A stretch of DNA of 63,140 nucleotides, filler included, from Hyphochytrium catenoides (lineage: Eukaryota; Protista; Hyphochytriomycota), in assembly GCA_900088475.1 (NCBI GenBank). It is 9 parts of 9 records of this genome, joined end to end, with 100 filler letters (N's around TTAATTAATTAA, not from the genome) between each part and the next. Parts side by side here need not be neighbours in the genome. Positions count along the whole stretch, not along the records: positions 12,161 to 22,382 come from FLMG01002536.1; 8 more parts are not named here. One strand, written 5' to 3'. The first letter of the stretch is position 1; every line of letters begins with the position of its first letter. Position numbers and translations under genes: made by a program. This document shows, in pieces, positions 12,415-22,382 of this stretch. The notes beneath the pieces were generated by a model that searched no databases, had not been told where the DNA came from, and was given only the letters and a program-made list of their open reading frames with translations.

Positions 12415-15400
12415 TTAAGTCTGAGGAGGGGTCCGAGGAGGAGCTTGGTTCATCTTTTCCTCAGGACCACGAGGCGGTGCAGGTAGATGCCCTTCTCTGT
12501 GGACTCCTACTGGTATCGACTTGTTCGCCCAGGGAGCAGCTGTGGAGGCAGAGGGAGCAGCCCAAGGAGCGCGAGTAGCAGGGAGCCCATCTGCCCCAGC
12601 AGCAGCCCATGGAGCTTGTGTCTTCACTCCAAGACCTGGAAAGGGGCCGCAGCAGTAGTGAAAGAGTTGTGAGACGGGGTTAACCTCTCACGAATAGGCA
12701 TAGTCTGGTGAGACTTGCGAGCTTTACCATATCCTGGGCAGTAACAGAGAACATTGCGATCAACTAAACTTACTGGGCTGTCTGACTTCTCTTTCTCCGC
12801 CAGCAGCTGGCTCCCAGTCACAAGGAAGAATTGCACCAAAGACGAAGTGCTGGATGACAGGGAGCTTTCCCAGCACTTCGTTATCGTAGTACTTGAGCAT
12901 CCCACTGTTCACCTTTGTCCAGGATGGGACGCCACTGATGTCGTTCAGCATGGGTGAGCTCTCCGCAAAGGGAACTCCTTTCTTCACCTACAAGGGGTTG
13001 CATCCAGCGCTATTTAGTGGACATGAGAGTCTTTTGACGGCAATAGAAGTTGTTGCAATAAGGCTGAACGTTGACCATCATATCTATAGGAAGTCCTGAG
13101 AAGGACAAGGACACGAAATGGACAAGGTGATAGTTTGGGGCTACGGAGGTTTGACCAGACAGTGATTTGGCTCTTCAAGGAGGGAGCAGAATGTAGTTGG
13201 AGAGGTACAAGAAGTTTCCCGTACTGTCGTGATGAACTTTATGGCATCGAGGTACAGATAGTCGTCCGCGAACTGGGAAATAATATCCTCGTTATGTATG
13301 GAAGACGGCTGAATAAGGGGATGTTCTTCAGGCGGGACGGCGGCATGTCAGAGATACAGTCAAGCACGAAGAGGACCATATTGATATCCATTATATGGGG
13401 CCAAATCAGGCAGAATACGAAGAGTAACGACCCAAGGAGTGCCAGGATGAAAGGGTTGAAATAAAGAGTAGAAGAAGCTCAAGCAATAGCTTCTCAGAAG
13501 TTTCAGTAGACTCGAGTTATCAGAGAGAAATGTCTTGGGCGATCGCTGCAGAGCAAAGCAAGCGCCATAAGTATGGGCGGGGAAGTCATCGAGACGTTGA
13601 GGTAGGAGGGCGACATACCTAAAAGCTGGCTGGCTCCCCAGTAGAAGACTAGCATCTGGTAGTCGTCGAGACCCCAGACGCCATGCGACCCAGCGGGCTC
13701 TAGCATATAAACAGTTTGCAGCCGACGCATCAGCTTTAAATACCTAGAAATAGAGGGATGAACAAAGAATCAGCGTATGCCCAAACATCTCAGGTCAGGG
13801 AGGAAGAATTATTCCAGCTTCAAATGTCAGTGGGGAAGATGATGGCGTCAATCGAAGGTGAGCAAGGACGAGAACAATCCCAAACCCTAGGTGGCTCCAT
13901 AAGAGAAAGCGAACGAATTGGAAAAGGTGTAGGACAGAGAGCCTATAGACCACTAGCAAAGTCCTACTCCTCTCTACCTATCAAAAACTCGCAAAACAAT
14001 GGCTGGGCAGTCAGGGGCCTGCAGGTACCCAATTTTATACAAACAACCTGAGATAGAGGGCAATATCGTCAGCTCCACACACGAAAGAGCAAAGAGCACA
14101 GAGTCAGAACATGCCAAAAGAGGGGAGGTCGCTACGAACAACGAGACTCAGTTCCAAACCCTATGTACCAAACGCCAAGCAGTGATGCTTGCATATGAGA
14201 GCCTAGTAGCCGTGCTTACAAAGGAACATGACGAAGCATGTCTCATGCCCGCTTCCGTAATCTATCCGGGTAGGATTGCCGAAGGAGTCTTGGAGATAGG
14301 GGAGTAGTTCCACTACAGCAGCGTGCAGCTCGGAAGGAAGAACTTCTGAGAGCATATGAGGACTCCTCTGAGCGCAGGCGCGATCACGAGCCAAAAGATT
14401 CGATTTGACGACGTCCAAAAAAAGAGCGAGAAGAGAGCAGAGAGGACCAGCTGAGTACAAGAGTGAAAACAAGAAGGGCTCGGGAGCCTTTTAAGTCATT
14501 TTGTAGAGTCGGCCGGTCGGCTAGTGCATGTGGTATAAGAGACAAAGCAGCATCTCATAACCCCGCAAGGTGGGGAGCTGAGTGGGCCGGATAAACCAGA
14601 AGAGAGTTGCACGGCCAAACAGTGCACGGCCTGGAACTTGCACGATAAGAAGCCCACATTCATCTGAAATGAAAGAAGACTCATATAGACCCATACTTTT
14701 TGTGCACCTACCTCTACGAGTCTTGCATGAAACTTTTTGAAAGCTTTGTTGCCGAATCGGCCCAAAGTTGAGGGTTCTGGCGGGATCTCATCTATCCAGC
14801 TGTCCATCGTATCCAGTATAGACTCTACCTTTGCCAGTGCCTAAGGAGGAGCATATGTCAATAGGACAGCAAGATGTGGGAAGCAAGGGTGCCACTCAAA
14901 AAAGGAAGGGACAACAAGCAAAAGAAACCCAAGGACCAGTGGAAGGGGCAAGGCAATTGTAAGGAGATGAGTCATAGAGCATAAAGGATTTTGCAGATGA
15001 AGCTTTCCAACTTGATTGGTCCGGCCTGCAAACACGACGAATATCAAAAGGGCAAAGGAGGTAGATGGGTGCTAGATGGGTGCTGAATTGCCTCCACTGG
15101 CTCTTGGACTAGAGATAATCTTGGTATACCTCAGAGACAGGATAAGAGTCACTTTTCTTCTTTCCCTTCACACTTTCATTCAGTAACCGCACGAAGAGCA
15201 TGAGTTCTTTATAGCTCTGAGGACGAAGGCATGCGAAGAGAAAAGAAGAGAGATGAGGGGGTGATGGGCATTGAGGAACAGAAAGAGCCATGAAGGTAAA
15301 GGCGTATTAGGCTGAAGGATAAGCAAAACTCCGGCAGATGTTCGCGCGATTGAGAAAACGAGAGCTGAGCAGAGGGATGGAAGAGTGGAAGAAGCTTGAA

Positions 15401-15827
15401 GAGGAAAGGAAGGATTGTGGAGAGAAGGGCACCCTATAGTATGTCCCTCACGAAAAGCGAGAGATGCTGATAAGGGCTGTCTCAACACGTTAGGGAGCCG
15501 CTGAGGGAGCAGAGGTAGAGTGAGATAATAGATCTCAGGCCAAGCAAACGAGCACAAACAGGAATGCAAGGAGGAAGAAAATATTGAGGGCGCCTTAGCT
15601 GTGGCAATCAACTCACACTTAGAGAGAATTGCGTGAAGCAAAGAGGAGAGACTTGACAGGGCGGCATCAGAGAAGTAAAGAAGATAAGAAGCGCAAACTA
15701 AAACCTGAGACTGCCGAAAGGCATGCAGGTCCTGCGGGACGAAGATGGCGCGTTTCGGGAGCTTGTACTGAAAGTCCGCAGCCTTGGTGGGACCGGAGTC
15801 AGTCACTTGTCCCGTTTCGGATGCCAT
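12415..15827 (-). CDS. PTPA: Serine/threonine phosphatase 2A activator (PTPA / Rrd1-Rrd2 family), multi-exon
   Basis: Exons encode [53 protein letters not shown] and [15 protein letters not shown]; ATG at 15827; last exon ends at 12415. Confidence 0.95.
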
Positions 15828-16721
15828 AGTCGCTCGCTTGCTTTAGGAAATCTGGCTTGCTTCTATCCTCCTAAAGCAATGCTGCGTCTTAGCACTGGGC
15901 AGTTCCACTGCGCGGCTCTGTCTTCTCCTGAAGAACTTCTCTATTTGCAGCGCCTCTGTTCTGCTGAAGAAAGCGAGTGTGGAGCCTGCCGCTGCTCGGT
16001 GGGGTGACGCTCCTGCCGCTGCTGCCGCCAGCTCGCGATCAGAACCCTGGCGTTATCTTTTTTGGTACAGACTTGAACTAGATCTGCACGAAGAACTTAG
16101 TCATCTCTTAGAAAGTAACAACCTATCTCCCGAATATGGCTCTAAGTCTGATATTATAGCGCTGCAAGGAAAAGCGTTACCGAATATAGGTGGTGACACT
16201 AAAAGCAGTGATGACAATGGACAGAAAGCAGTAGCAACCAGTTTCTCACTCAACAGACGAAGAGCAAGAAGCCCTGTCCTCTTCCGCTTTGGGATGCTCC
16301 TCGACACCATGCGGCCTTCTCCTCTCCTGTTTCTCCGCCGCTGCTGGTGACCGACCTCATGCAAAAAGCTGGCTACTACTTCGTAGTTTGACGGCGGCTG
16401 CTTCTCTTATAGAGCTGAGGGCCATGGAAGAGCTGGGTTGGAGGACGGTTTAGCTCGTTTCGAAGCCAGTCAACGGCCTAACATACTCATCTCATCGCAC
16501 TCACGCAGAGGCTAGTCAAGCAGAGAGCCCTGTGTGTAGGTTTTGTCTAGGTAGATCGCTGTCTCGAACACATTGGGACGGAGGGAGTCACGCCCAGGAG
16601 TATCGTCCTTGTAGGGTTAGTAGTATCTACATCGACTATCTAGTTTAGGTTATATATATATATATATGTGCAAGGGAACAAAGGGATTCGCTATGCCACC
16701 GTAGAGCTGGTGCTTCGACCC

Positions 16722-19700
16722 TCACGTTATAGTACATCCACCGCTGTATCCATCAAGGTTAACATCGGTCTCACGTCCCCTTCCCCTTGCCCTGAAGAGT
16801 GAATAGGTAAGGTAAGCGCCCAGAAACTCTTGAGTCGTCAACGTCACGCAACAGACAGAATGACAGGACAGGACAAAAAGAGAGAGAGAAAGAAAGAAAA
16901 GTGAGAGACATAGAGAGAGAGAAAGTGAGGAAAGAGGACCGATTAGCGAGTAGTTGCGCATACAATGTCACTTTGGTGTCCTCGATCACTTTCGAAGTAC
17001 CAACGGATAGTCTCCAAGGCCTTACCTCCTATTCTCCGAGTACGCGATCCCATAGTTTCTCTTCAAAAAGCCCCTCAATGACCGATATTCGCTGCTCAGT
17101 CTGCTCATCTGCTTCTCTAGGGTCTGGCGATGCTTTTCATCGTCTTCCTGGGCAAGTTTCTTACCTAAATCTTCAACAGCGTAGGCAGCAGCTCGGAGCC
17201 TATAGCGGGAGGAAGTTCGCGAAAAGCGGAAAGTGACGCAGCGCTTAGACAGAGTAGTAGAAAATGATGGCCCTATAAAAGAATAGGCATCCAACCTCTC
17301 TGCTGCCACATAACTCGAAGCTCCTTTCAGAGAATGTGCTTCCCGATACATTGACGACCAATTTTCCATGTTATAAGCCTAATGAGCAGTTGCCAAACAG
17401 AACAGTATTAGTGAGCAAAACCGGACCGACGTGGCAGCTCCCAAGATCTCTGCCACCTTACCTGAAGGATCCTCTGCATCGTCTGCTGGCTCCCTGCCGC
17501 GAACTTCTGCAGCATGTTCGAGAAGAGCTCTTCATCGCCTCCGCAGTTTTCGAGCCCACTTTCATAATCTATGGGATCGAATCCCTCATTGCCTCCCTCT
17601 AGTCCCTCTGGGGCTGTTTCTCCCGAGGCCTCAAGTTGTCTCTCTCCCGCCGCAGCACTTTGTCCTGGCAGATCTTCTCCTTCGTCGTCTTCCTTTTCTT
17701 CTTTTCCTTCCTCACTCCTCTGTCGCCGCTCTTCTTCAATTCTGGCTCTGAGGATACCCTCAAGCGCGGAATTGGTCCCTGACCCGCTGTCAATAGTGCT
17801 GCCGTTCCCCGGGTCCCCAAAGTCTTGCCCATTCTCGCTACTGTTGGACATGTAAGTGTCTGTGAAGCGTGACGAGTCCCCGGCAACCGCAGCATTAACC
17901 TTGATTCAGGCAAGCAGGAGTTAGTCAGGGCGAACCAGTACGTGTAAGATAAGAAGTGATTGTATAGGGAAAAGGTTCTGGTTTAGGCAAGAGCGGATTC
18001 AAATTAGGCACAACCAAACTCAAAAGCAGAGGAAATCTTATAGAACAGGCCACAGGAGCAGCTGCTCCTGATCCTAGGAATCCCCAGGGACGGGTGTTCG
18101 TTTGCGCAATGACGTGATAGAACAGAACGTTTGATAGAGATGAAAAGTGGGTTTCCGGGTCAAGAGCAGACCTCAAGTTTCATAGTCTCCAAAGCCTGGT
18201 TAACATTGATCGTGTCAATGGCATCAACAGCAGTCGAGGGTAGCTCTTCTCGCTTGAGTACTTCTCCCTTCAGAGGGGTTGACAACTCTTTGCGGCTACT
18301 CTTCCGATCCAAAAGGCATCGCATTACGATGCTGTTCAACTTTTTCCTGGAAAGCAGACAAGGACGGTTGAGTTGAGGTGACGAGAGGTCCAAGCACAGA
18401 CAGATAGTGAACCAGTATGAAGCACACCATCAGAAGGTTAGGAAAACGAAGTGGACATGAAGATTGGCGGACATGGATCATCTCGTACAAGAGCATCGCG
18501 ATTTTCCTGGGAGGGCACAGAGCAAAGTGAACCTGTATCTACCCCTTGCTCACCTTGTAACTGGTTTTGAAAGATACTCGTCCATTCCATGCTTGAGACA
18601 CTTTTCCCGGTCTCCAAGCATTGTGAAGGCAGTCAAACCCACGATAGGAATACGAGGGAGGTTGTGTCTTTGTTCGTACTCTCTTATGCGCACGGTGGCC
18701 TCATAGCCATCCTATGCATGGAGAAAGTGCATAGAGCGAGAGCGAGAGGAACATAGCGGAATGAGAGCCTGTATAATTGGCTCCTCCTCCGACCCTACCC
18801 CTTCATACGTAGCGAGAGCATTCCCCATAATGAACCACTTTTCTTACCATCACTGGCATCTCACAGTCCATGAGTATGATATCATAAACGTTAGCATTCT
18901 TCTCGTATTTCTTGACCGCCTCCTTTCCATTCGTTGCCCAGTCAAATGTGTGCCCTTCTTTCACTAGGAAATTCTGTACTACCTCCATGTTGAAGTTATT
19001 GTCCTGTAAGGGTGTGGAAAGGCAGTGAGAAACACACAGTGGGAGGACTCGGTTTGAAGGGTAGCCCTAGCAGGCGGACCTGAATGAGAGCCAGATTTCA
19101 TCCAAAAGGAAGTGAGAAAGTAGGTGGCATAACCTTCTAGCTGTTTGAGAAACGTGATGACTACGAGGTCAGCTTTGGGACTGATCTGAGACTATAAAAG
19201 TAGGTAAAAAAAGGCTATGATTTGGGAAACTGGCTCACCTCCACCACAAGAACATGTGCTTCCGCCTGCTTCTCTTTCTCTCCTTGCATCTTCAGCAGCG
19301 CCTTCGCTTCCTCCTCATAGCCAATGACATCCAGGACGTTGCTTGGGCCCTCTTGCAGGGCTCCAACATCGGCGCTGGCGCTTTCATTTCTCATGAAAAC
19401 AACCGTGAAATAGAAGGTGGAGCCTTGCCTACCCAAGATGCAACACCGCACAAGTGGCAGTAGGAGACAGTCATGAGGAAGAAAGAAGTGAGCCACCTAA
19501 AAGATACCCTTGGCTTTCGGGGCTACCTTCTCAAGACTGTAGCGTGCAAACCGAATTGATCATGTGGCCATCACACCCGTTAGAACCGTCGAGAATGTTC
19601 CCGGTCGCACTATCTTTTTGTATCATCCTCCCAACCTATTGCTCCGGTCTGAGGCAAGTCTTACTTTGGTTTGCTTTTGACGCCGATCTTTCCGCCCATG

Positions 19701-22382
19701 AGCTCTACGAGCTGCCGGCAAATTGCCAGTCCCAGACCGGATCCAGTGGGATTCTGCTTCCTCGTGCTATTTAACTTGGTGAACATCGAAAATAGATGTC
19801 GCATATCCTCAGTGTTCATCCCAATGCCAGTATCAGTCACCTGTGAATAAGGGATCGTAGTCTTGGTAAGTGCTGCTTATGGCTCAATTTGTTTAGTGCC
19901 GATGGGCACTTAGACGCTCAGACCTTGAAGAGGAGGCACAGCTGACTATCGGCTAGGCCTTCAGGCTGCGGGTCCGCGACGTGACAGCTGACGATAACGC
20001 TGCCTCCCTTTGGGGTGAACTTCACAGCGTTTGATATAAGGTTGAGGATCACCTGCACAGCACAACGAAGCTACATTAGTGGTTGACACAGAGAGAGGCT
20101 GGCAGGCGGCCACCAGTGACAAGGGCCTTTGGGTAAGGGTTAATTAAGATGGAGACAGCTCAAAACTCCTAAGAAGCATGAGACGAGACGAAAGGAGGGG
20201 TGGGGTGTACTCACCTGTCTTAGTCTCATGACATCCCCAGCAACCACTGCAGGTACATCTTGGTCCACTTCCAGCGTCATGACGATGTTGTGGGATGCAG
20301 CCTGCGGCTTCATAAACGCCAGAGTGGTCTCCAAAGCGTGCTTAACATTAAATGGAGAGCATGACACTTCCAGGCGACCAGCCTCAATTTTGGAGAGGTC
20401 CAAGATATCATTGATAAGGTTGAGCAGAAGCGATCCAGAAATGAAAGCAAGTCTAGAGGTGGAGGAGTGTTAGAAGTTGCACACTCGCCAATGGACAGGG
20501 GGTTTACAGGGGAAAATAGAGAGATAGCGCGATAGGAGATGGCCAAGAGCAGCAATGACGAGCAAAGGGACTGCCCCATGACAGGCGATAAAGTAGCCAG
20601 CAAGACGACGGCAAGTGAAATCCGGGCAGTCCATTAAAGTAAAGGAGAAGGGCTTTCACGATGCCAATACGAGCCGCTATCTACTGGTGACCGTTACCTT
20701 GCATATCTCCGTGCTTCCTCGTCTAGATCCATCCCCATTAAGAGCTCCAGCATACCAAGAATGCCATTGAGAGGTGTCCGCAGCTCGTGGCTAAAGGAAG
20801 CAAGGAAGGTGACCTATCGGAGGTACGGAGACAGGTCAAGATCAGCCTCAAGAGCAAAAGGCGACCTATCGAATCAACATCCATTCTNNNNNNNNNNNNN
20901 NNNNNNNNNNNNNNNNNNNNNNNNNNAGCTCCCTCATGTTTTACACCCAAACCAAGCTTGCGCACCTTAGCTTCTTCCATCTTCTTTCTCGCAGTCAAGT
21001 CTTGTCCAATACAGACTACGCTGATGACGTTGCCGTCTACGTCCTTCCTGCCAGTTGCTGACGCCAGAAGTACTCTTTCTTCACCCCTTTTGGTCTTGAA
21101 GGGAAGTTCAAACTCCTCTGTCTCAAGACCGATAAGAGCATTCTCCAGGACCCTGCGTACGTTTGCTCTGCTTTTGGCGGCGACAAAGCTTCGAACCTTT
21201 AAGAACATATATATCAGCACAAGGGTCAGGAACAGCGATGAAATCAAGAATGCTAGAGCGAGCAAGAAAGGAAATGATGTCATTGCTTGCGCCCTTCAGA
21301 CTTATATCCTTACCAGCACCCTCCCAATGACCTCAGACTTGGAGAAACCAGTTATCTCCTCAATCTTCAGGTTCCACTCATTTATTTGCCCCTTGGAGTC
21401 GATTCCAAATATCGGCGCTGCAGAATTGAGAAACATGGATGAGGTTCGCGATAAGTTACGCCGTGAGGGGCGCGTGAGGGGGGAATGGAAGGACAGTTCA
21501 ATAGAAAAAAGATTGGAGCGGAAAGACAGATGGTAGGGCCCATCTACGACTAGACTTTCCGTATGGGATGACGCATCGCCGTTGCAGAAATCGGAGTTGC
21601 TTTGGTACGCAAAAAGAAGAGCAGTACGACTTGAAATGATAAAGGACCAGGAAGGTGGGCACAGGGAATGAGACGAACCATTGGCACTCTCAATGAGTCT
21701 AAAATACTCCTTCTCTTGGGCGATTCTCTCTGTGATGTCCTGCCCAATTCCAACCATGCCCACAATATTTCCCAGATGATCTCGACGCGGTGTCGCACTC
21801 AACAACAGCTCAACCCGTATCCCTATAATCAAACGTCAGGGTCAGATTGAGGAAGGGGGCACAGGATCGTCGAGTCTTGGGCTTTCAAGGGAACATTTAC
21901 TAGTGGATACGAAAGTATGTAGCACAACGCACGAAAGTGTATGCGAGATCGCGGAACAATCTCTCTTTGGAGGGATGTTACCTCTTCTGGTGATCAGTGG
22001 GAACTGGAAATTCGCTGTGTCTTCACCTTGGAGGGCAGATTGAATGACAGCGTTGACCGCATCCCGGTATTCAGGGATGATAAAGTCCTCAACTAGGTTA
22101 CGACCCATAACGTCTTCTTCCTGTGGTTATTGTCAGCTGGCATCCAAAGATAAGTTCTTCCATAGTTCTTTCATTCTACCCTATCTCTTACATCTACAGA
22201 TATTCTGTCCGCCAGCTTCCTGCGCCACGTGCCTCTGTGACCCCTCCAGAACTTACTCTTACATTAATAACCTAATCTCGCTCCCATTCCTTTAGAAGAA
22301 AGTGGTAGCTGCTGCACTGCCTTGACTGAAGGCAATCGGTACGAACCCTATGGTACTCTCTCTCACCTTGAAGTGCGTGATG
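16722..22382 (-). CDS. Multi-PAS hybrid sensor histidine kinase with receiver, fused HPt domain and CaaX-like C-terminus; 5' truncated
   Basis: PAS repeats (APIFGID...NEWN, GIGQDIT); H-box [11 protein letters not shown]; N/G boxes [24 protein letters not shown]; REC (LVVE|[12 protein letters not shown]|DG, GLTA, SKPV); HPt AHSLKGASS; final exon ...GGCTIT*. Kinase and REC are certain. Fusion to HPt and the last exon rests on phase-compatible splice sites. Confidence 0.85.
17026..17899 (-). CDS. Linker and histidine phosphotransfer (HPt) exons of the kinase gene
   Basis: [24 protein letters not shown]...[18 protein letters not shown]|RAAAYAVE. The acceptor before 17899 has a CTGACTAAC branch-like motif and is in frame with ORF 17408..17851. 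Confidence 0.88.

What the first reader, a model, noticed from the sequence alone, without database searches (positions are those of the whole stretch)
16722..22382. Eukaryotic 'unorthodox' histidine kinase: whole His-Asp-His relay (PAS-PAS-HisKA-HATPase-REC-HPt) in one spliced gene
Seen: the REC exon ends KPVT-ag|gtgag and joins in phase 2 to [10 protein letters not shown]. That exon ends ...TMKLE|gtctgc (18172, phase 0). An acceptor with a CTGACTAAC branch-like motif opens an exon at 17899, 16 codons upstream of and in frame with the ORF track's separate 17851 ORF, which leads into HPt AHSLKGASS. All three phospho-acceptors (H-box His, REC Asp, HPt His) are intact. Known: fungal and plant relays normally use a free-standing HPt (Ypd1/AHP), whereas a fused HPt is typical of bacterial ArcB/BvgS/GacS kinases. 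Inference: a self-contained relay that gene callers would likely split in two. The GTCTGC donor is weak, so this join is the uncertain step.
Basis: partly seen in the sequence, partly recalled or inferred. Interest (0 to 1): 0.78.

Follow-up and report, generated by a model that had tools for sequence, protein, structure and literature searches.

The report
Spliced histidine kinase with built-in HPt
This is a real, intron-rich eukaryotic sensor kinase gene that very probably carries its own phosphotransfer (HPt) domain at the end, but the same design is already common in water moulds (oomycetes), so it is a new member of a known family rather than a new kind of relay.

Summary
On the minus strand lies a gene cut at its 5' end by the piece's edge. 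It has 16 phase-consistent exons: two or more PAS domains, HisKA, HATPase_c, REC, a linker of about 150 residues, and HPt. All three phospho-acceptor residues are intact.

The N gap lies inside intron 5. In 82 of 82 homologues the residues matching exon 5 and exon 6 are directly adjacent, so no coding residue is hidden there.

Homology or Pfam profile continuity supports most other junctions. Only the key join (18172|17899) rests on splice signals alone. Its GTCTG donor recurs at exon 8 of the same gene. A join carrying the local signals arises in 0.35% of shuffles.

Relatives settle the architecture. The exons are collinear with, and 50-76% identical to, dozens of oomycete multi-PAS hybrid kinases that end in the same HPt module. 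Two related loci encode REC, linker and HPt in one uninterrupted reading frame.

This architecture is published for Albugo and Physarum, and a Phytophthora sojae member has been knocked out.

The window's kinase core is about 59-60% identical to every oomycete member, so it probably comes from another, unidentified lineage. No RNA data could be obtained.

The parts
22367..22382 (-). Exon 1 (partial; cut by the edge of the piece): ...ITHFK, inside a PAS domain
   Evidence: Donor AAG|gtgaga. Read by eye, ITHFK+[19 protein letters not shown] has the same spacing as ITKYSTAEVIGENLVETFISPEYR in P0024.
21982..22120 (-). Exon 2: middle of the first visible PAS domain
   Evidence: Pfam PAS profile 39-77. 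The junction to exon 3 leaves exactly the one split-codon residue in 80 of 80 homologues.
21679..21822 (-). Exon 3: end of the first PAS domain ([10 protein letters not shown]) and the inter-PAS linker
   Evidence: Pfam PAS_4 profile 81-108. Up to 72% identical to PAS repeats in metagenome loci.
21314..21417 (-). Exon 4: start of the second PAS domain ([15 protein letters not shown]...)
   Evidence: Pfam PAS profile 13-44, E 2e-8. Junction E3|E4 gives 1 residue in 79 of 80 homologues and E4|E5 gives 0 in 80 of 83.
20966..21196 (-). Exon 5: rest of the second PAS domain, ending ...[12 protein letters not shown]
   Evidence: Pfam PAS_4 profile 42-109. 47-49% identical over its full length to oomycete proteins.
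20814..20965 (-). Intron 5 (GTGCGC...AG), holding the assembly gap N 20888-20926
   Evidence: TAG directly upstream of 20813 closes the frame of exon 6. There are 0 residues between the E5 and E6 matches in 82 of 82 homologues. P0024 reads [18 protein letters not shown] across the same point.
20698..20813 (-). Exon 6: HisKA H-box ([11 protein letters not shown]; His codon 20789-20787)
   Evidence: Pfam HisKA E 8e-12. PDB histidine kinase and RetS E 7e-10. 73-76% identical to oomycete kinases.
20215..20452 (-). Exon 7: second HisKA helix ([12 protein letters not shown]) and the start of the catalytic domain
   Evidence: Pfam HisKA profile 48-66. 52-56% identical over all 79 residues to oomycete proteins.
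19924..20052 (-). Exon 8: HATPase_c N-box ([10 protein letters not shown]). Its donor is AAG|GTCTGA.
   Evidence: Pfam profile 9-34. A stop follows one codon after the donor, so this GTCTG donor is forced. E7|E8 gives 0 residues in 110 of 113 homologues.
19665..19840 (-). Exon 9: HATPase_c G1, F and G2 boxes ([21 protein letters not shown])
   Evidence: Pfam HATPase_c E 1e-14, profile 43-97. 70-72% identical to oomycete proteins.
19239..19428 (-). Exon 10: G3 box ([10 protein letters not shown]), a non-conserved spacer, and the first REC strand (HVLVVE)
   Evidence: [13 protein letters not shown] aligns to EGSEFFFTVVVRR of P0024.
18848..19003 (-). Exon 11: first half of REC with the phospho-acceptor Asp (ILMD; codon 18868-18866)
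   Evidence: Pfam Response_reg profile 6-55. Best PDB match is the AHK5 receiver 4EUK, with LMD aligned.
18554..18711 (-). Exon 12: second half of REC (GLTA..., SKPVT), donor AAG|gtgagc
   Evidence: Pfam profile 56-101. 63-69% identical to oomycete proteins. E11|E12 gives 0 residues in 116 of 117 homologues.
18172..18346 (-). Exon 13: last REC helix ([12 protein letters not shown]) and a lineage-specific linker. It ends TMKLE with donor GAG|GTCTGC.
   Evidence: No homology in relatives. In-frame TGA at 18162-18160 if the intron is not removed.
17900..18171 (-). Proposed intron 13 (272 nt): GTCTGC ... CTGACTAAC ... AG|G
   Evidence: It carries the signals typical of the other 14 introns: G|GTnnG, CTRAY 8-35 nt before the AG, and AG|G. 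Such a join arises in 0.35% of 2000 dinucleotide shuffles. No RNA evidence.
17462..17899 (-). Exon 14: acidic, disordered-looking linker, then the first HPt helices ([26 protein letters not shown]...)
   Evidence: Residues 71-144 are 41% identical to P0024 directly upstream of its HPt His. E14|E15 gives 0 residues in 75 of 75 homologues.
17296..17378 (-). Exon 15: HPt helix with the phospho-acceptor His ([11 protein letters not shown]; codon 17336-17334)
   Evidence: Pfam Hpt profile 22-45; 28.5 bits, above the cut-off, on the stop-free stretch. 54-62% identical to oomycete HPt.
17022..17199 (-). Exon 16: last HPt helices (...[12 protein letters not shown]) and stop TAA 17024-17022
   Evidence: The alignment to P0024 opens a gap exactly over the 32 codons of intron 15, and [16 protein letters not shown] aligns to LKSEHRALRGYLRRNF.

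Best explanation
Minus strand 22382-17022 holds the 3' two-thirds or less of one eukaryotic gene with at least 16 exons. It encodes a cytoplasmic multi-PAS hybrid histidine kinase that ends in its own HPt domain. It belongs to the family so far annotated almost only in oomycetes.

The inferred working is as follows, and none of it was assayed here:
1. The PAS repeats sense a signal.
2. The kinase core autophosphorylates the H-box His in exon 6.
3. The phosphoryl group passes within the protein or dimer to the REC Asp in exon 11.
4. It then crosses a flexible linker of about 150 residues to the HPt His in exon 15.
5. From there it would go to a separate response regulator.

Shown: the domains, the intact catalytic and acceptor motifs, most splice junctions, the intronic position of the assembly gap, and orthology-level similarity to fused oomycete proteins. 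Inferred: removal of the 272-nt intron 13 that links REC to HPt, and all biochemistry.
For: - Exon model: all 15 junctions are phase-consistent.
- Domains: Pfam per exon, with profile positions that continue across the junctions.
- Collinearity: the exons lie in the same order in oomycete proteins at 50-76% identity. Nine junctions, including the one across the N gap, leave exactly 0 residues (phase 0) or 1 residue (split codon) between the matches in most or all homologues (75 to 116 each; only 6 of 28 for E15|E16).
- HPt module: E14 tail, E15 and E16 match the C-terminal HPt module of the family (41% and 33% identity to P0024).
- Relatives: roughly nine in ten oomycete relatives carry PF01627 after REC.
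- One reading frame in relatives: L008 has a 2469-aa ORF with REC at 1963-2079 and Hpt at 2315-2392. L081 has one ORF for P0024.
- Junction 13: the donor G|GTCTG equals the forced donor of exon 8. The CTGAC/CTAAC branch motif and AG|G fit the other introns. A join of that quality arises in 0.35% of shuffles.
- Spacing: the HK stop to the HPt ATG is 309 nt, whereas the next gene (PTPA) starts 1.2 kb after the HPt stop.
Against: - No transcript evidence: no RNA run was listed.
- Exon 13 and the first ~70 residues of exon 14 have no homologue, so the exact junction cannot be checked by comparison.
- An in-frame TGA follows the donor by four codons, and an ATG lies 16 codons after the acceptor, so a two-gene reading is formally possible.
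- Some in-phase GT..AG pair exists in 72% of shuffles. The stricter criteria were chosen after seeing the site.
Confidence: 0.85

Rival explanations
1. Gene fission. In this lineage the ancestral fused gene has split. The kinase-REC gene ends at TGA 18160 (...LEVCS*), and a separate gene of about 216 residues starts at ATG 17851. That gene keeps a remnant of the old linker ahead of the HPt domain.
For: The in-frame stop and the downstream ATG are both present. No homology constrains the region 18345-17670. A minority of annotated family members lack Hpt. Free-standing HPt proteins are the eukaryotic norm (PMC6324907).
Against: - Only 309 nt would have to hold a 3' UTR, a terminator or poly(A) site, a promoter and a 5' UTR. 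The one measurable intergenic spacer here is 1.2 kb.
- The interval has a donor, branch motif and acceptor of the local type, which is rare by chance (0.35%).
- Surveys found eukaryotic two-component genes are not neighbours (PMC4558063).
- The relatives are fused in one ORF.
Confidence: 0.1
2. Both forms are made. Removing intron 13 gives the self-contained relay. Retaining it gives an HPt-less hybrid kinase, because of the TGA at 18160.
For: The donor departs from GTRAG and the stop lies four codons inside the intron. Intron 15 is also in frame and stop-free, so isoforms are conceivable.
Against: There is no expression data at all. The same GTCTG donor at exon 8 must be used constitutively to make an active ATPase domain, so this donor type need not be weak in this organism.
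Confidence: 0.04
3. The locus is a decaying pseudogene or an assembly chimera, and the apparent architecture is not expressed as a protein.
For: The piece is short, holds an assembly gap and lacks the gene's 5' end. The exon 14 search found no matching protein in the large library.
Against: All 16 exons are open and in phase. All catalytic and acceptor motifs are intact. The junction spacing matches the homologues exactly, including across the gap.
Confidence: 0.01

Closest known systems
Oomycete multi-PAS hybrid histidine kinases with a C-terminal HPt (Albugo laibachii F0WPU4 and F0WJK2, described in PMC6324907; Phytophthora sojae Ps130388, knocked out in PMC10072465; dozens of Phytophthora, Pythium, Aphanomyces, Saprolegnia and Bremia proteins)
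   Same: - The same domain order.
- The same PAS repeat type (ANAPIFG.D ... GIGQDIT).
- The same PAS-to-H-box joint (AK-V.[15 protein letters not shown]).
- A REC-HPt linker that is likewise long and poorly conserved.
- The same HPt module (DPIDY..G.E.CGG ... HSLKG.S.YVAA ... LRG.L.RN).
- Exons are collinear at 50-76% identity.
   Different: - The window gene has at least 15 introns. Two related loci, L008 (a more distant marine metagenome relative) and L081 (a Phytophthora-like contig encoding P0024), show one uninterrupted ORF.
- Its kinase core is about 59-60% identical to every oomycete member, while these are 71-99% identical to each other, so it lies outside that clade.
- The number of PAS repeats and the N-terminus are unknown, because the piece is cut at the 5' end.
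Physarum polycephalum PpolyHK5 and PpolyHK18 (PMC6324907)
   Same: These are eukaryotic hybrid kinases reported with an HPt fused after REC. The Physarum genome has many introns (median 231 nt) and gaps in scaffolds (PMC4758236), which resembles this piece.
   Different: Their sequences could not be obtained here, so no relationship was tested. Nothing shows that the window is from Physarum.
Bacterial unorthodox (tripartite) sensor kinases: ArcB, BvgS, EvgS, TorS, BarA/GacS
   Same: The same His-Asp-His logic within one polypeptide, and the same order HisKA-HATPase_c-REC-HPt.
   Different: - This is a eukaryotic, intron-rich gene.
- No transmembrane or periplasmic sensor is visible in the part held.
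- The HPt exons match none of the bacterial HK-REC-HPt proteins retrieved with the family and no solved HPt structure by sequence.
Canonical eukaryotic phosphorelays: Sln1-Ypd1-Ssk1 in yeast, AHK-AHP-ARR in plants
   Same: A hybrid kinase with REC. The receiver exon's best solved match is the Arabidopsis AHK5 receiver. By language-model features the HPt resembles eukaryotic stand-alone HPt clusters (a lead only).
   Different: There the HPt is a separate small protein shared by several kinases. Here it is most probably tethered to one kinase.

Membership tests
Oomycete-type multi-PAS hybrid histidine kinase with C-terminal HPt | Tandem PAS repeats of the ANAPIFG.D ... GIGQDIT type directly upstream of the kinase core | tested here: met
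   The two PAS C-terminal halves are 51% identical to each other. There are full-length matches to PAS repeats of L008 and of oomycete proteins.
Oomycete-type multi-PAS hybrid histidine kinase with C-terminal HPt | HisKA H-box and HATPase_c N, G1, F and G2 boxes intact and collinear with family members | tested here: met
   Pfam. 52-76% identity for E6, E7 and E9, in the same order and spacing.
Oomycete-type multi-PAS hybrid histidine kinase with C-terminal HPt | Receiver domain with its phospho-acceptor Asp following the kinase core | tested here: met
   Pfam Response_reg profile 6-55 and 56-101. LMD aligned to the AHK5 receiver. 50-69% identity to the family.
Oomycete-type multi-PAS hybrid histidine kinase with C-terminal HPt | Family-specific HPt module at the C-terminus with HSLKG His | tested here: met
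   Pfam Hpt 28.5 bits, above the 24.6 cut-off. Alignments to P0024. 75-76 family proteins are hit by E14 and E15, and no bacterial one.
Oomycete-type multi-PAS hybrid histidine kinase with C-terminal HPt | REC and HPt on one polypeptide | tested here: inconclusive
   Splice signals support the join, and relatives are fused in one ORF. There is no transcript evidence and no homology across the junction.
Oomycete-type multi-PAS hybrid histidine kinase with C-terminal HPt | Placement inside the oomycete clade of the family | tested here: not met
   About 59-60% identity to all members against 71-99% among them over 278 core residues; 15 introns. It is a relative outside the sampled clade, not an oomycete orthologue.
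Bacterial unorthodox sensor kinases (ArcB/BvgS/TorS/BarA type) | HisKA-HATPase_c-REC-HPt in one protein | tested here: inconclusive
   The domain order is met. The single polypeptide depends on junction 13.
Bacterial unorthodox sensor kinases (ArcB/BvgS/TorS/BarA type) | Prokaryotic gene, with an HPt related to the bacterial fused HPt domains | tested here: not met
   15 spliceosomal-type introns. The HPt exons hit none of the bacterial HK-REC-HPt proteins in the set and no solved HPt by sequence.
Bacterial unorthodox sensor kinases (ArcB/BvgS/TorS/BarA type) | Membrane-anchored N-terminal sensor | not testable with these tools
   The 5' end of the gene lies beyond the edge of the piece at 22382.
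Canonical eukaryotic relay with free-standing HPt (Ypd1/AHP type) | HPt encoded by its own gene and shared among kinases | tested here: inconclusive
   A two-gene reading is possible (stop 18160, ATG 17851). It is disfavoured by the 309-nt spacing, the splice signals and the family architecture.
Physarum HKs with fused HPt (PpolyHK5/18) | Sequence relationship to those proteins | not testable with these tools
   No supplementary sequences are held for PMC6324907.

The most novel reading that the evidence does not exclude
The locus makes two outputs from one gene. Removing intron 13 tethers the HPt to the kinase and gives a closed, cross-talk-proof relay. Retaining it (in-frame TGA at 18160), possibly with initiation at ATG 17851, gives an HPt-less hybrid kinase plus a free HPt. 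This would be a splice-controlled switch between a private and a shared phosphorelay, in a lineage outside the oomycetes where this family has not been described.
Probability: 0.08. Interest if true: 0.6.

Novelty: new member of a known kind. Interest (0 to 1): 0.33.

Why it matters
Self-contained His-Asp-His kinases are still widely thought to be bacterial. A 2021 review states that no eukaryotic hybrid kinase with a fused HPt has been reported (PMC8142344), although Albugo and Physarum cases were published in 2018 and a Phytophthora sojae member controls zoospore chemotaxis (PMC10072465).

This locus adds an intron-rich member that lies outside the oomycete clade. Together with an intronless CheR-fused relative from a marine metagenome (L008), it suggests the family is older and wider in eukaryotes than its current annotation implies.

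In practice it is a case where gene callers may cut the HPt off, because a stop follows the donor by four codons, or may read through the in-frame intron 15. It does not open a new kind of signalling system.

Tried and rejected
- RNA evidence. The look-up of sequencing runs listed no RNA run, so read laying could not be used.
- phmmer of exon 14 against 1.84 billion representatives gave 0 hits. The linker is lineage-specific, and the HPt part is too short for a library-wide E-value.
- A word search with the 118-aa stop-free HPt stretch gave 0 hits. The length window of 65-206 aa excludes fused relatives.
- PDB sequence searches with the HPt pieces found no HPt.
- Rfam on the whole piece found nothing.
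- An exact 27-mer from the end of exon 13 had no match in metagenome contigs.
- No supplementary sequences are held for the Kabbara et al. paper, so Physarum PpolyHK5/18 could not be compared.
- A dinoflagellate origin (AG|G acceptors, same-strand neighbours) was considered and dropped, because all 15 donors are GT.
- Physarum was considered because of its intron statistics and gapped scaffolds. Nothing tests it.
- An oomycete origin was rejected, because of the 15 introns and the equal ~59-60% distance to all oomycete members.
- A hidden exon in the N gap was rejected.
- tblastn of 120 relatives against 19100-16700 found no extra homologous exon inside the proposed intron 13.
- The organism was not identified.

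Full report
**What is there**

The feature lies on the minus strand. Six-frame reading and a phase check give 16 exons from the edge of the piece (22382) to a TAA at 17024-17022. All junctions are GT...AG and in phase.

Scanned exon by exon, Pfam finds:
- two PAS domains (exons 2-5);
- HisKA (exon 6 profile 4-39, exon 7 profile 48-66);
- HATPase_c (exon 8 profile 9-34, exon 9 profile 43-97);
- Response_reg (exon 11 profile 6-55, exon 12 profile 56-101);
- Hpt (exon 15 profile 22-45).

On the stop-free stretch 17378-17025 the Hpt match reaches 28.5 bits, above Pfam's cut-off of 24.6.

The three acceptor residues are present:
- His in [11 protein letters not shown] (20789-20787; PDB kinases E 7e-10);
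- Asp in IILMD (18868-18866; aligned to the LMD of the Arabidopsis AHK5 receiver);
- His in [10 protein letters not shown] (17336-17334).

The N, G1, F, G2 and G3 boxes can be read directly in exons 8-10. The first exon is cut by the edge of the piece inside a PAS domain, so the protein is longer than the roughly 890 residues seen.

**The assembly gap**

N 20888-20926 lies between the donor AAG|GTGCGC at 20965 and the acceptor at 20814. A TAG directly upstream of 20813 closes the frame of exon 6, so that acceptor is forced.

In 82 of 82 homologous proteins the residue aligned with the last residue of exon 5 is immediately followed by the residue aligned with the first residue of exon 6. One relative reads [18 protein letters not shown] where the window reads KKMEEAK|[10 protein letters not shown]. 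The gap is therefore intronic and hides no coding sequence. Frame continuity across it is not needed.

**Relatives**

Direct searches with the linker and HPt pieces found nothing. An alignment of the two PAS halves was used to scan metagenome contigs and returned 80 loci.

One of them, L008, holds a single uninterrupted 2469-residue ORF. Its architecture is CheR, PAS_10, eight PAS, HisKA, HATPase_c, Response_reg (1963-2079) and Hpt (2315-2392).

Searching the large protein collection with its C-terminal region returned dozens of oomycete proteins of 1400-4200 residues. They come from Phytophthora, Pythium, Globisporangium, Aphanomyces, Saprolegnia, Thraustotheca, Albugo, Bremia, Peronospora, Plasmopara and Lagenidium. 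Nearly all of them carry PAS, HisKA, HATPase_c, Response_reg and PF01627 Hpt.

The window's exons map onto these proteins in order:

| Exon | Identity to oomycete proteins |
|---|---|
| E6 | 73-76% |
| E7 | 52-56% |
| E9 | 70-72% |
| E11 | about 50% |
| E12 | 63-69% |
| E15 | 54-62% |

The tail of exon 14 is 41% identical to the segment just before the HPt His of P0024 ([19 protein letters not shown] against DPIDYSLGVEQCGGNESLF). Exons 15-16 align to its HPt with a gap exactly over the 32 in-frame codons of intron 15, and share the C-terminal LRG.L.RN motif.

P0024 is encoded by one continuous ORF on its contig. None of the bacterial HK-REC-HPt proteins retrieved alongside the family is hit by the HPt exons.

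**Splice junctions**

For E4|E5, E5|E6, E7|E8, E11|E12 and E14|E15 the homologues leave 0 residues between consecutive exon matches. For the split-codon junctions E2|E3, E3|E4 and E6|E7 they leave exactly 1, in 75-116 proteins each.

E9|E10 is supported by [10 protein letters not shown] against EGSEFFFTVV. E1|E2 and E10|E11 have equal spacing to P0024 when read by eye. E8|E9 has variable spacing in the homologues and rests on the forced donor of exon 8 and the continuing HATPase_c profile. E15|E16 rests mainly on the P0024 alignment, since only 6 of 28 homologues leave exactly 1 residue there. E12|E13 fits only loosely ([16 protein letters not shown] against KPISKNELRKAIRKWM).

The key junction E13|E14 has no comparative support. 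Exon 13 and the first ~70 residues of exon 14 match nothing, as expected for a linker that also varies among oomycetes (141-320 residues).

**Is junction 13 real?**

Evidence for the junction:
- The donor GAG|GTCTGC has G at -1 and +5, like 13 and 12 of the other 14 donors.
- Exon 8 ends AAG|GTCTGA, followed by a stop one codon later. It must be spliced there to give the conserved LLFK|VTDTGIGM, so GTCTG donors work in this gene.
- CTGACTAAC lies 20-25 nt before the AG. Eight of the other 14 introns have CTRAY within 12-29 nt of their AG, and 12 of 14 acceptors are followed by G.
- In 2000 dinucleotide shuffles of the interval, some in-phase open GT..AG pair exists in 72%. A pair with G|GTnnG, CTRAY and AG|G exists in only 0.35%. 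The criteria were set after seeing the site, so this figure is indicative only.
- The kinase stop and the HPt ATG would be 309 nt apart, while the next gene on the same strand (PTPA) starts 1.2 kb after the HPt stop.
- The HPt module is the family's own, and in relatives it sits on the same polypeptide.

Evidence against it:
- No RNA run could be listed.
- A stop four codons into the intron and an ATG 16 codons after the acceptor make a fission reading possible.

I put the fused reading at about 0.85, fission at about 0.10, and regulated retention or other outcomes at about 0.05.

**Comparison with what is known**

Kabbara et al. 2018 (PMC6324907) reported an HPt fused to REC in two Physarum kinases and in the two multi-PAS kinases of Albugo laibachii. 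They also noted similar multi-PAS kinases in Guillardia and Emiliania.

A Phytophthora sojae kinase with multiple PAS domains, a kinase core, REC and HPt was knocked out and found necessary for zoospore chemotaxis (PMC10072465).

A 2015 census found no HK-REC-HPt protein in eukaryotes (PMC4558063). A 2021 review still says none has been reported (PMC8142344).

**Which lineage?**

Over 278 core residues (compared exon by exon and summed arithmetically) the window is 58-61% identical to every oomycete member. Those members are 71-99% identical among themselves, including the split between Saprolegniales and Peronosporales and the paralogues within species.

Together with 15 introns of 83-272 nt, this places the gene outside the sampled oomycetes. 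The organism could not be identified. The intron statistics and gapped scaffolds recall Physarum, but nothing tests that.

All evidence is per exon or per stop-free reference.

**Verdict**

The single-gene reading is well supported but not proven. The architecture is already known in eukaryotes. This is a new, probably non-oomycete, intron-rich member of a known family.

Noticed in passing
window 12415-15827, minus strand: The downstream neighbour on the same strand is a multi-exon PTPA gene (phosphotyrosyl phosphatase / PP2A activator). ATG is at 15827 and the stop at 12417-12415. One 71-residue exon matches yeast Ypa2 and human PTPA at E 1e-14. Its C-terminal tail has repeated APWA motifs. 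Its introns are about 250-500 nt, longer than those of the kinase gene.
   Followed up: partly
window 17200-17295, minus strand (intron 15): This 96-nt intron is in frame and free of stops, with a weak GTTGGA donor. Read-through would insert 32 residues into an HPt helix, and an ORF-based caller would keep it. The homologue P0024 has a gap exactly there.
   Followed up: yes
L008:376-7785 (+), metagenome contig Ga0308021_10002365: A GC-rich, intronless 2469-residue ORF fuses a CheR methyltransferase and PAS_10 to eight PAS repeats, a kinase core, REC and HPt. L016 is a near copy (86% identical, P0003) whose REC is in another frame. The organism is unknown; its best named bacterial hit is Magnetococcus, and oomycete proteins cover more of its length.
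   Followed up: partly
window 19923-19918 and 18171-18166, minus strand: Two donors of the unusual form G|GTCTG occur in one gene. Overall only GT, G at -1 and G at +5 are conserved among the 15 donors, and CTRAY branch motifs lie 12-29 nt from the acceptor. This may help to recognise the source lineage.
   Followed up: partly
window about 16651-16668 and 16850-16935: A (TA)n microsatellite and long CT-rich tracts lie in the presumed 3' UTR and intergenic region after the HPt stop.
   Followed up: no
L004, L046, L061 (metagenome loci): Other relatives of the PAS/kinase core change reading frame between homologous segments. These are probably further intron-containing eukaryotic members of the family at 41-49% identity in the PAS exon. 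The contigs end before an HPt could be seen.
   Followed up: no
literature: A 2021 review (PMC8142344) states that no eukaryotic hybrid kinase with a fused Hpt is reported. This contradicts PMC6324907 (2018) and the many annotated oomycete proteins with PF01627.
   Followed up: yes
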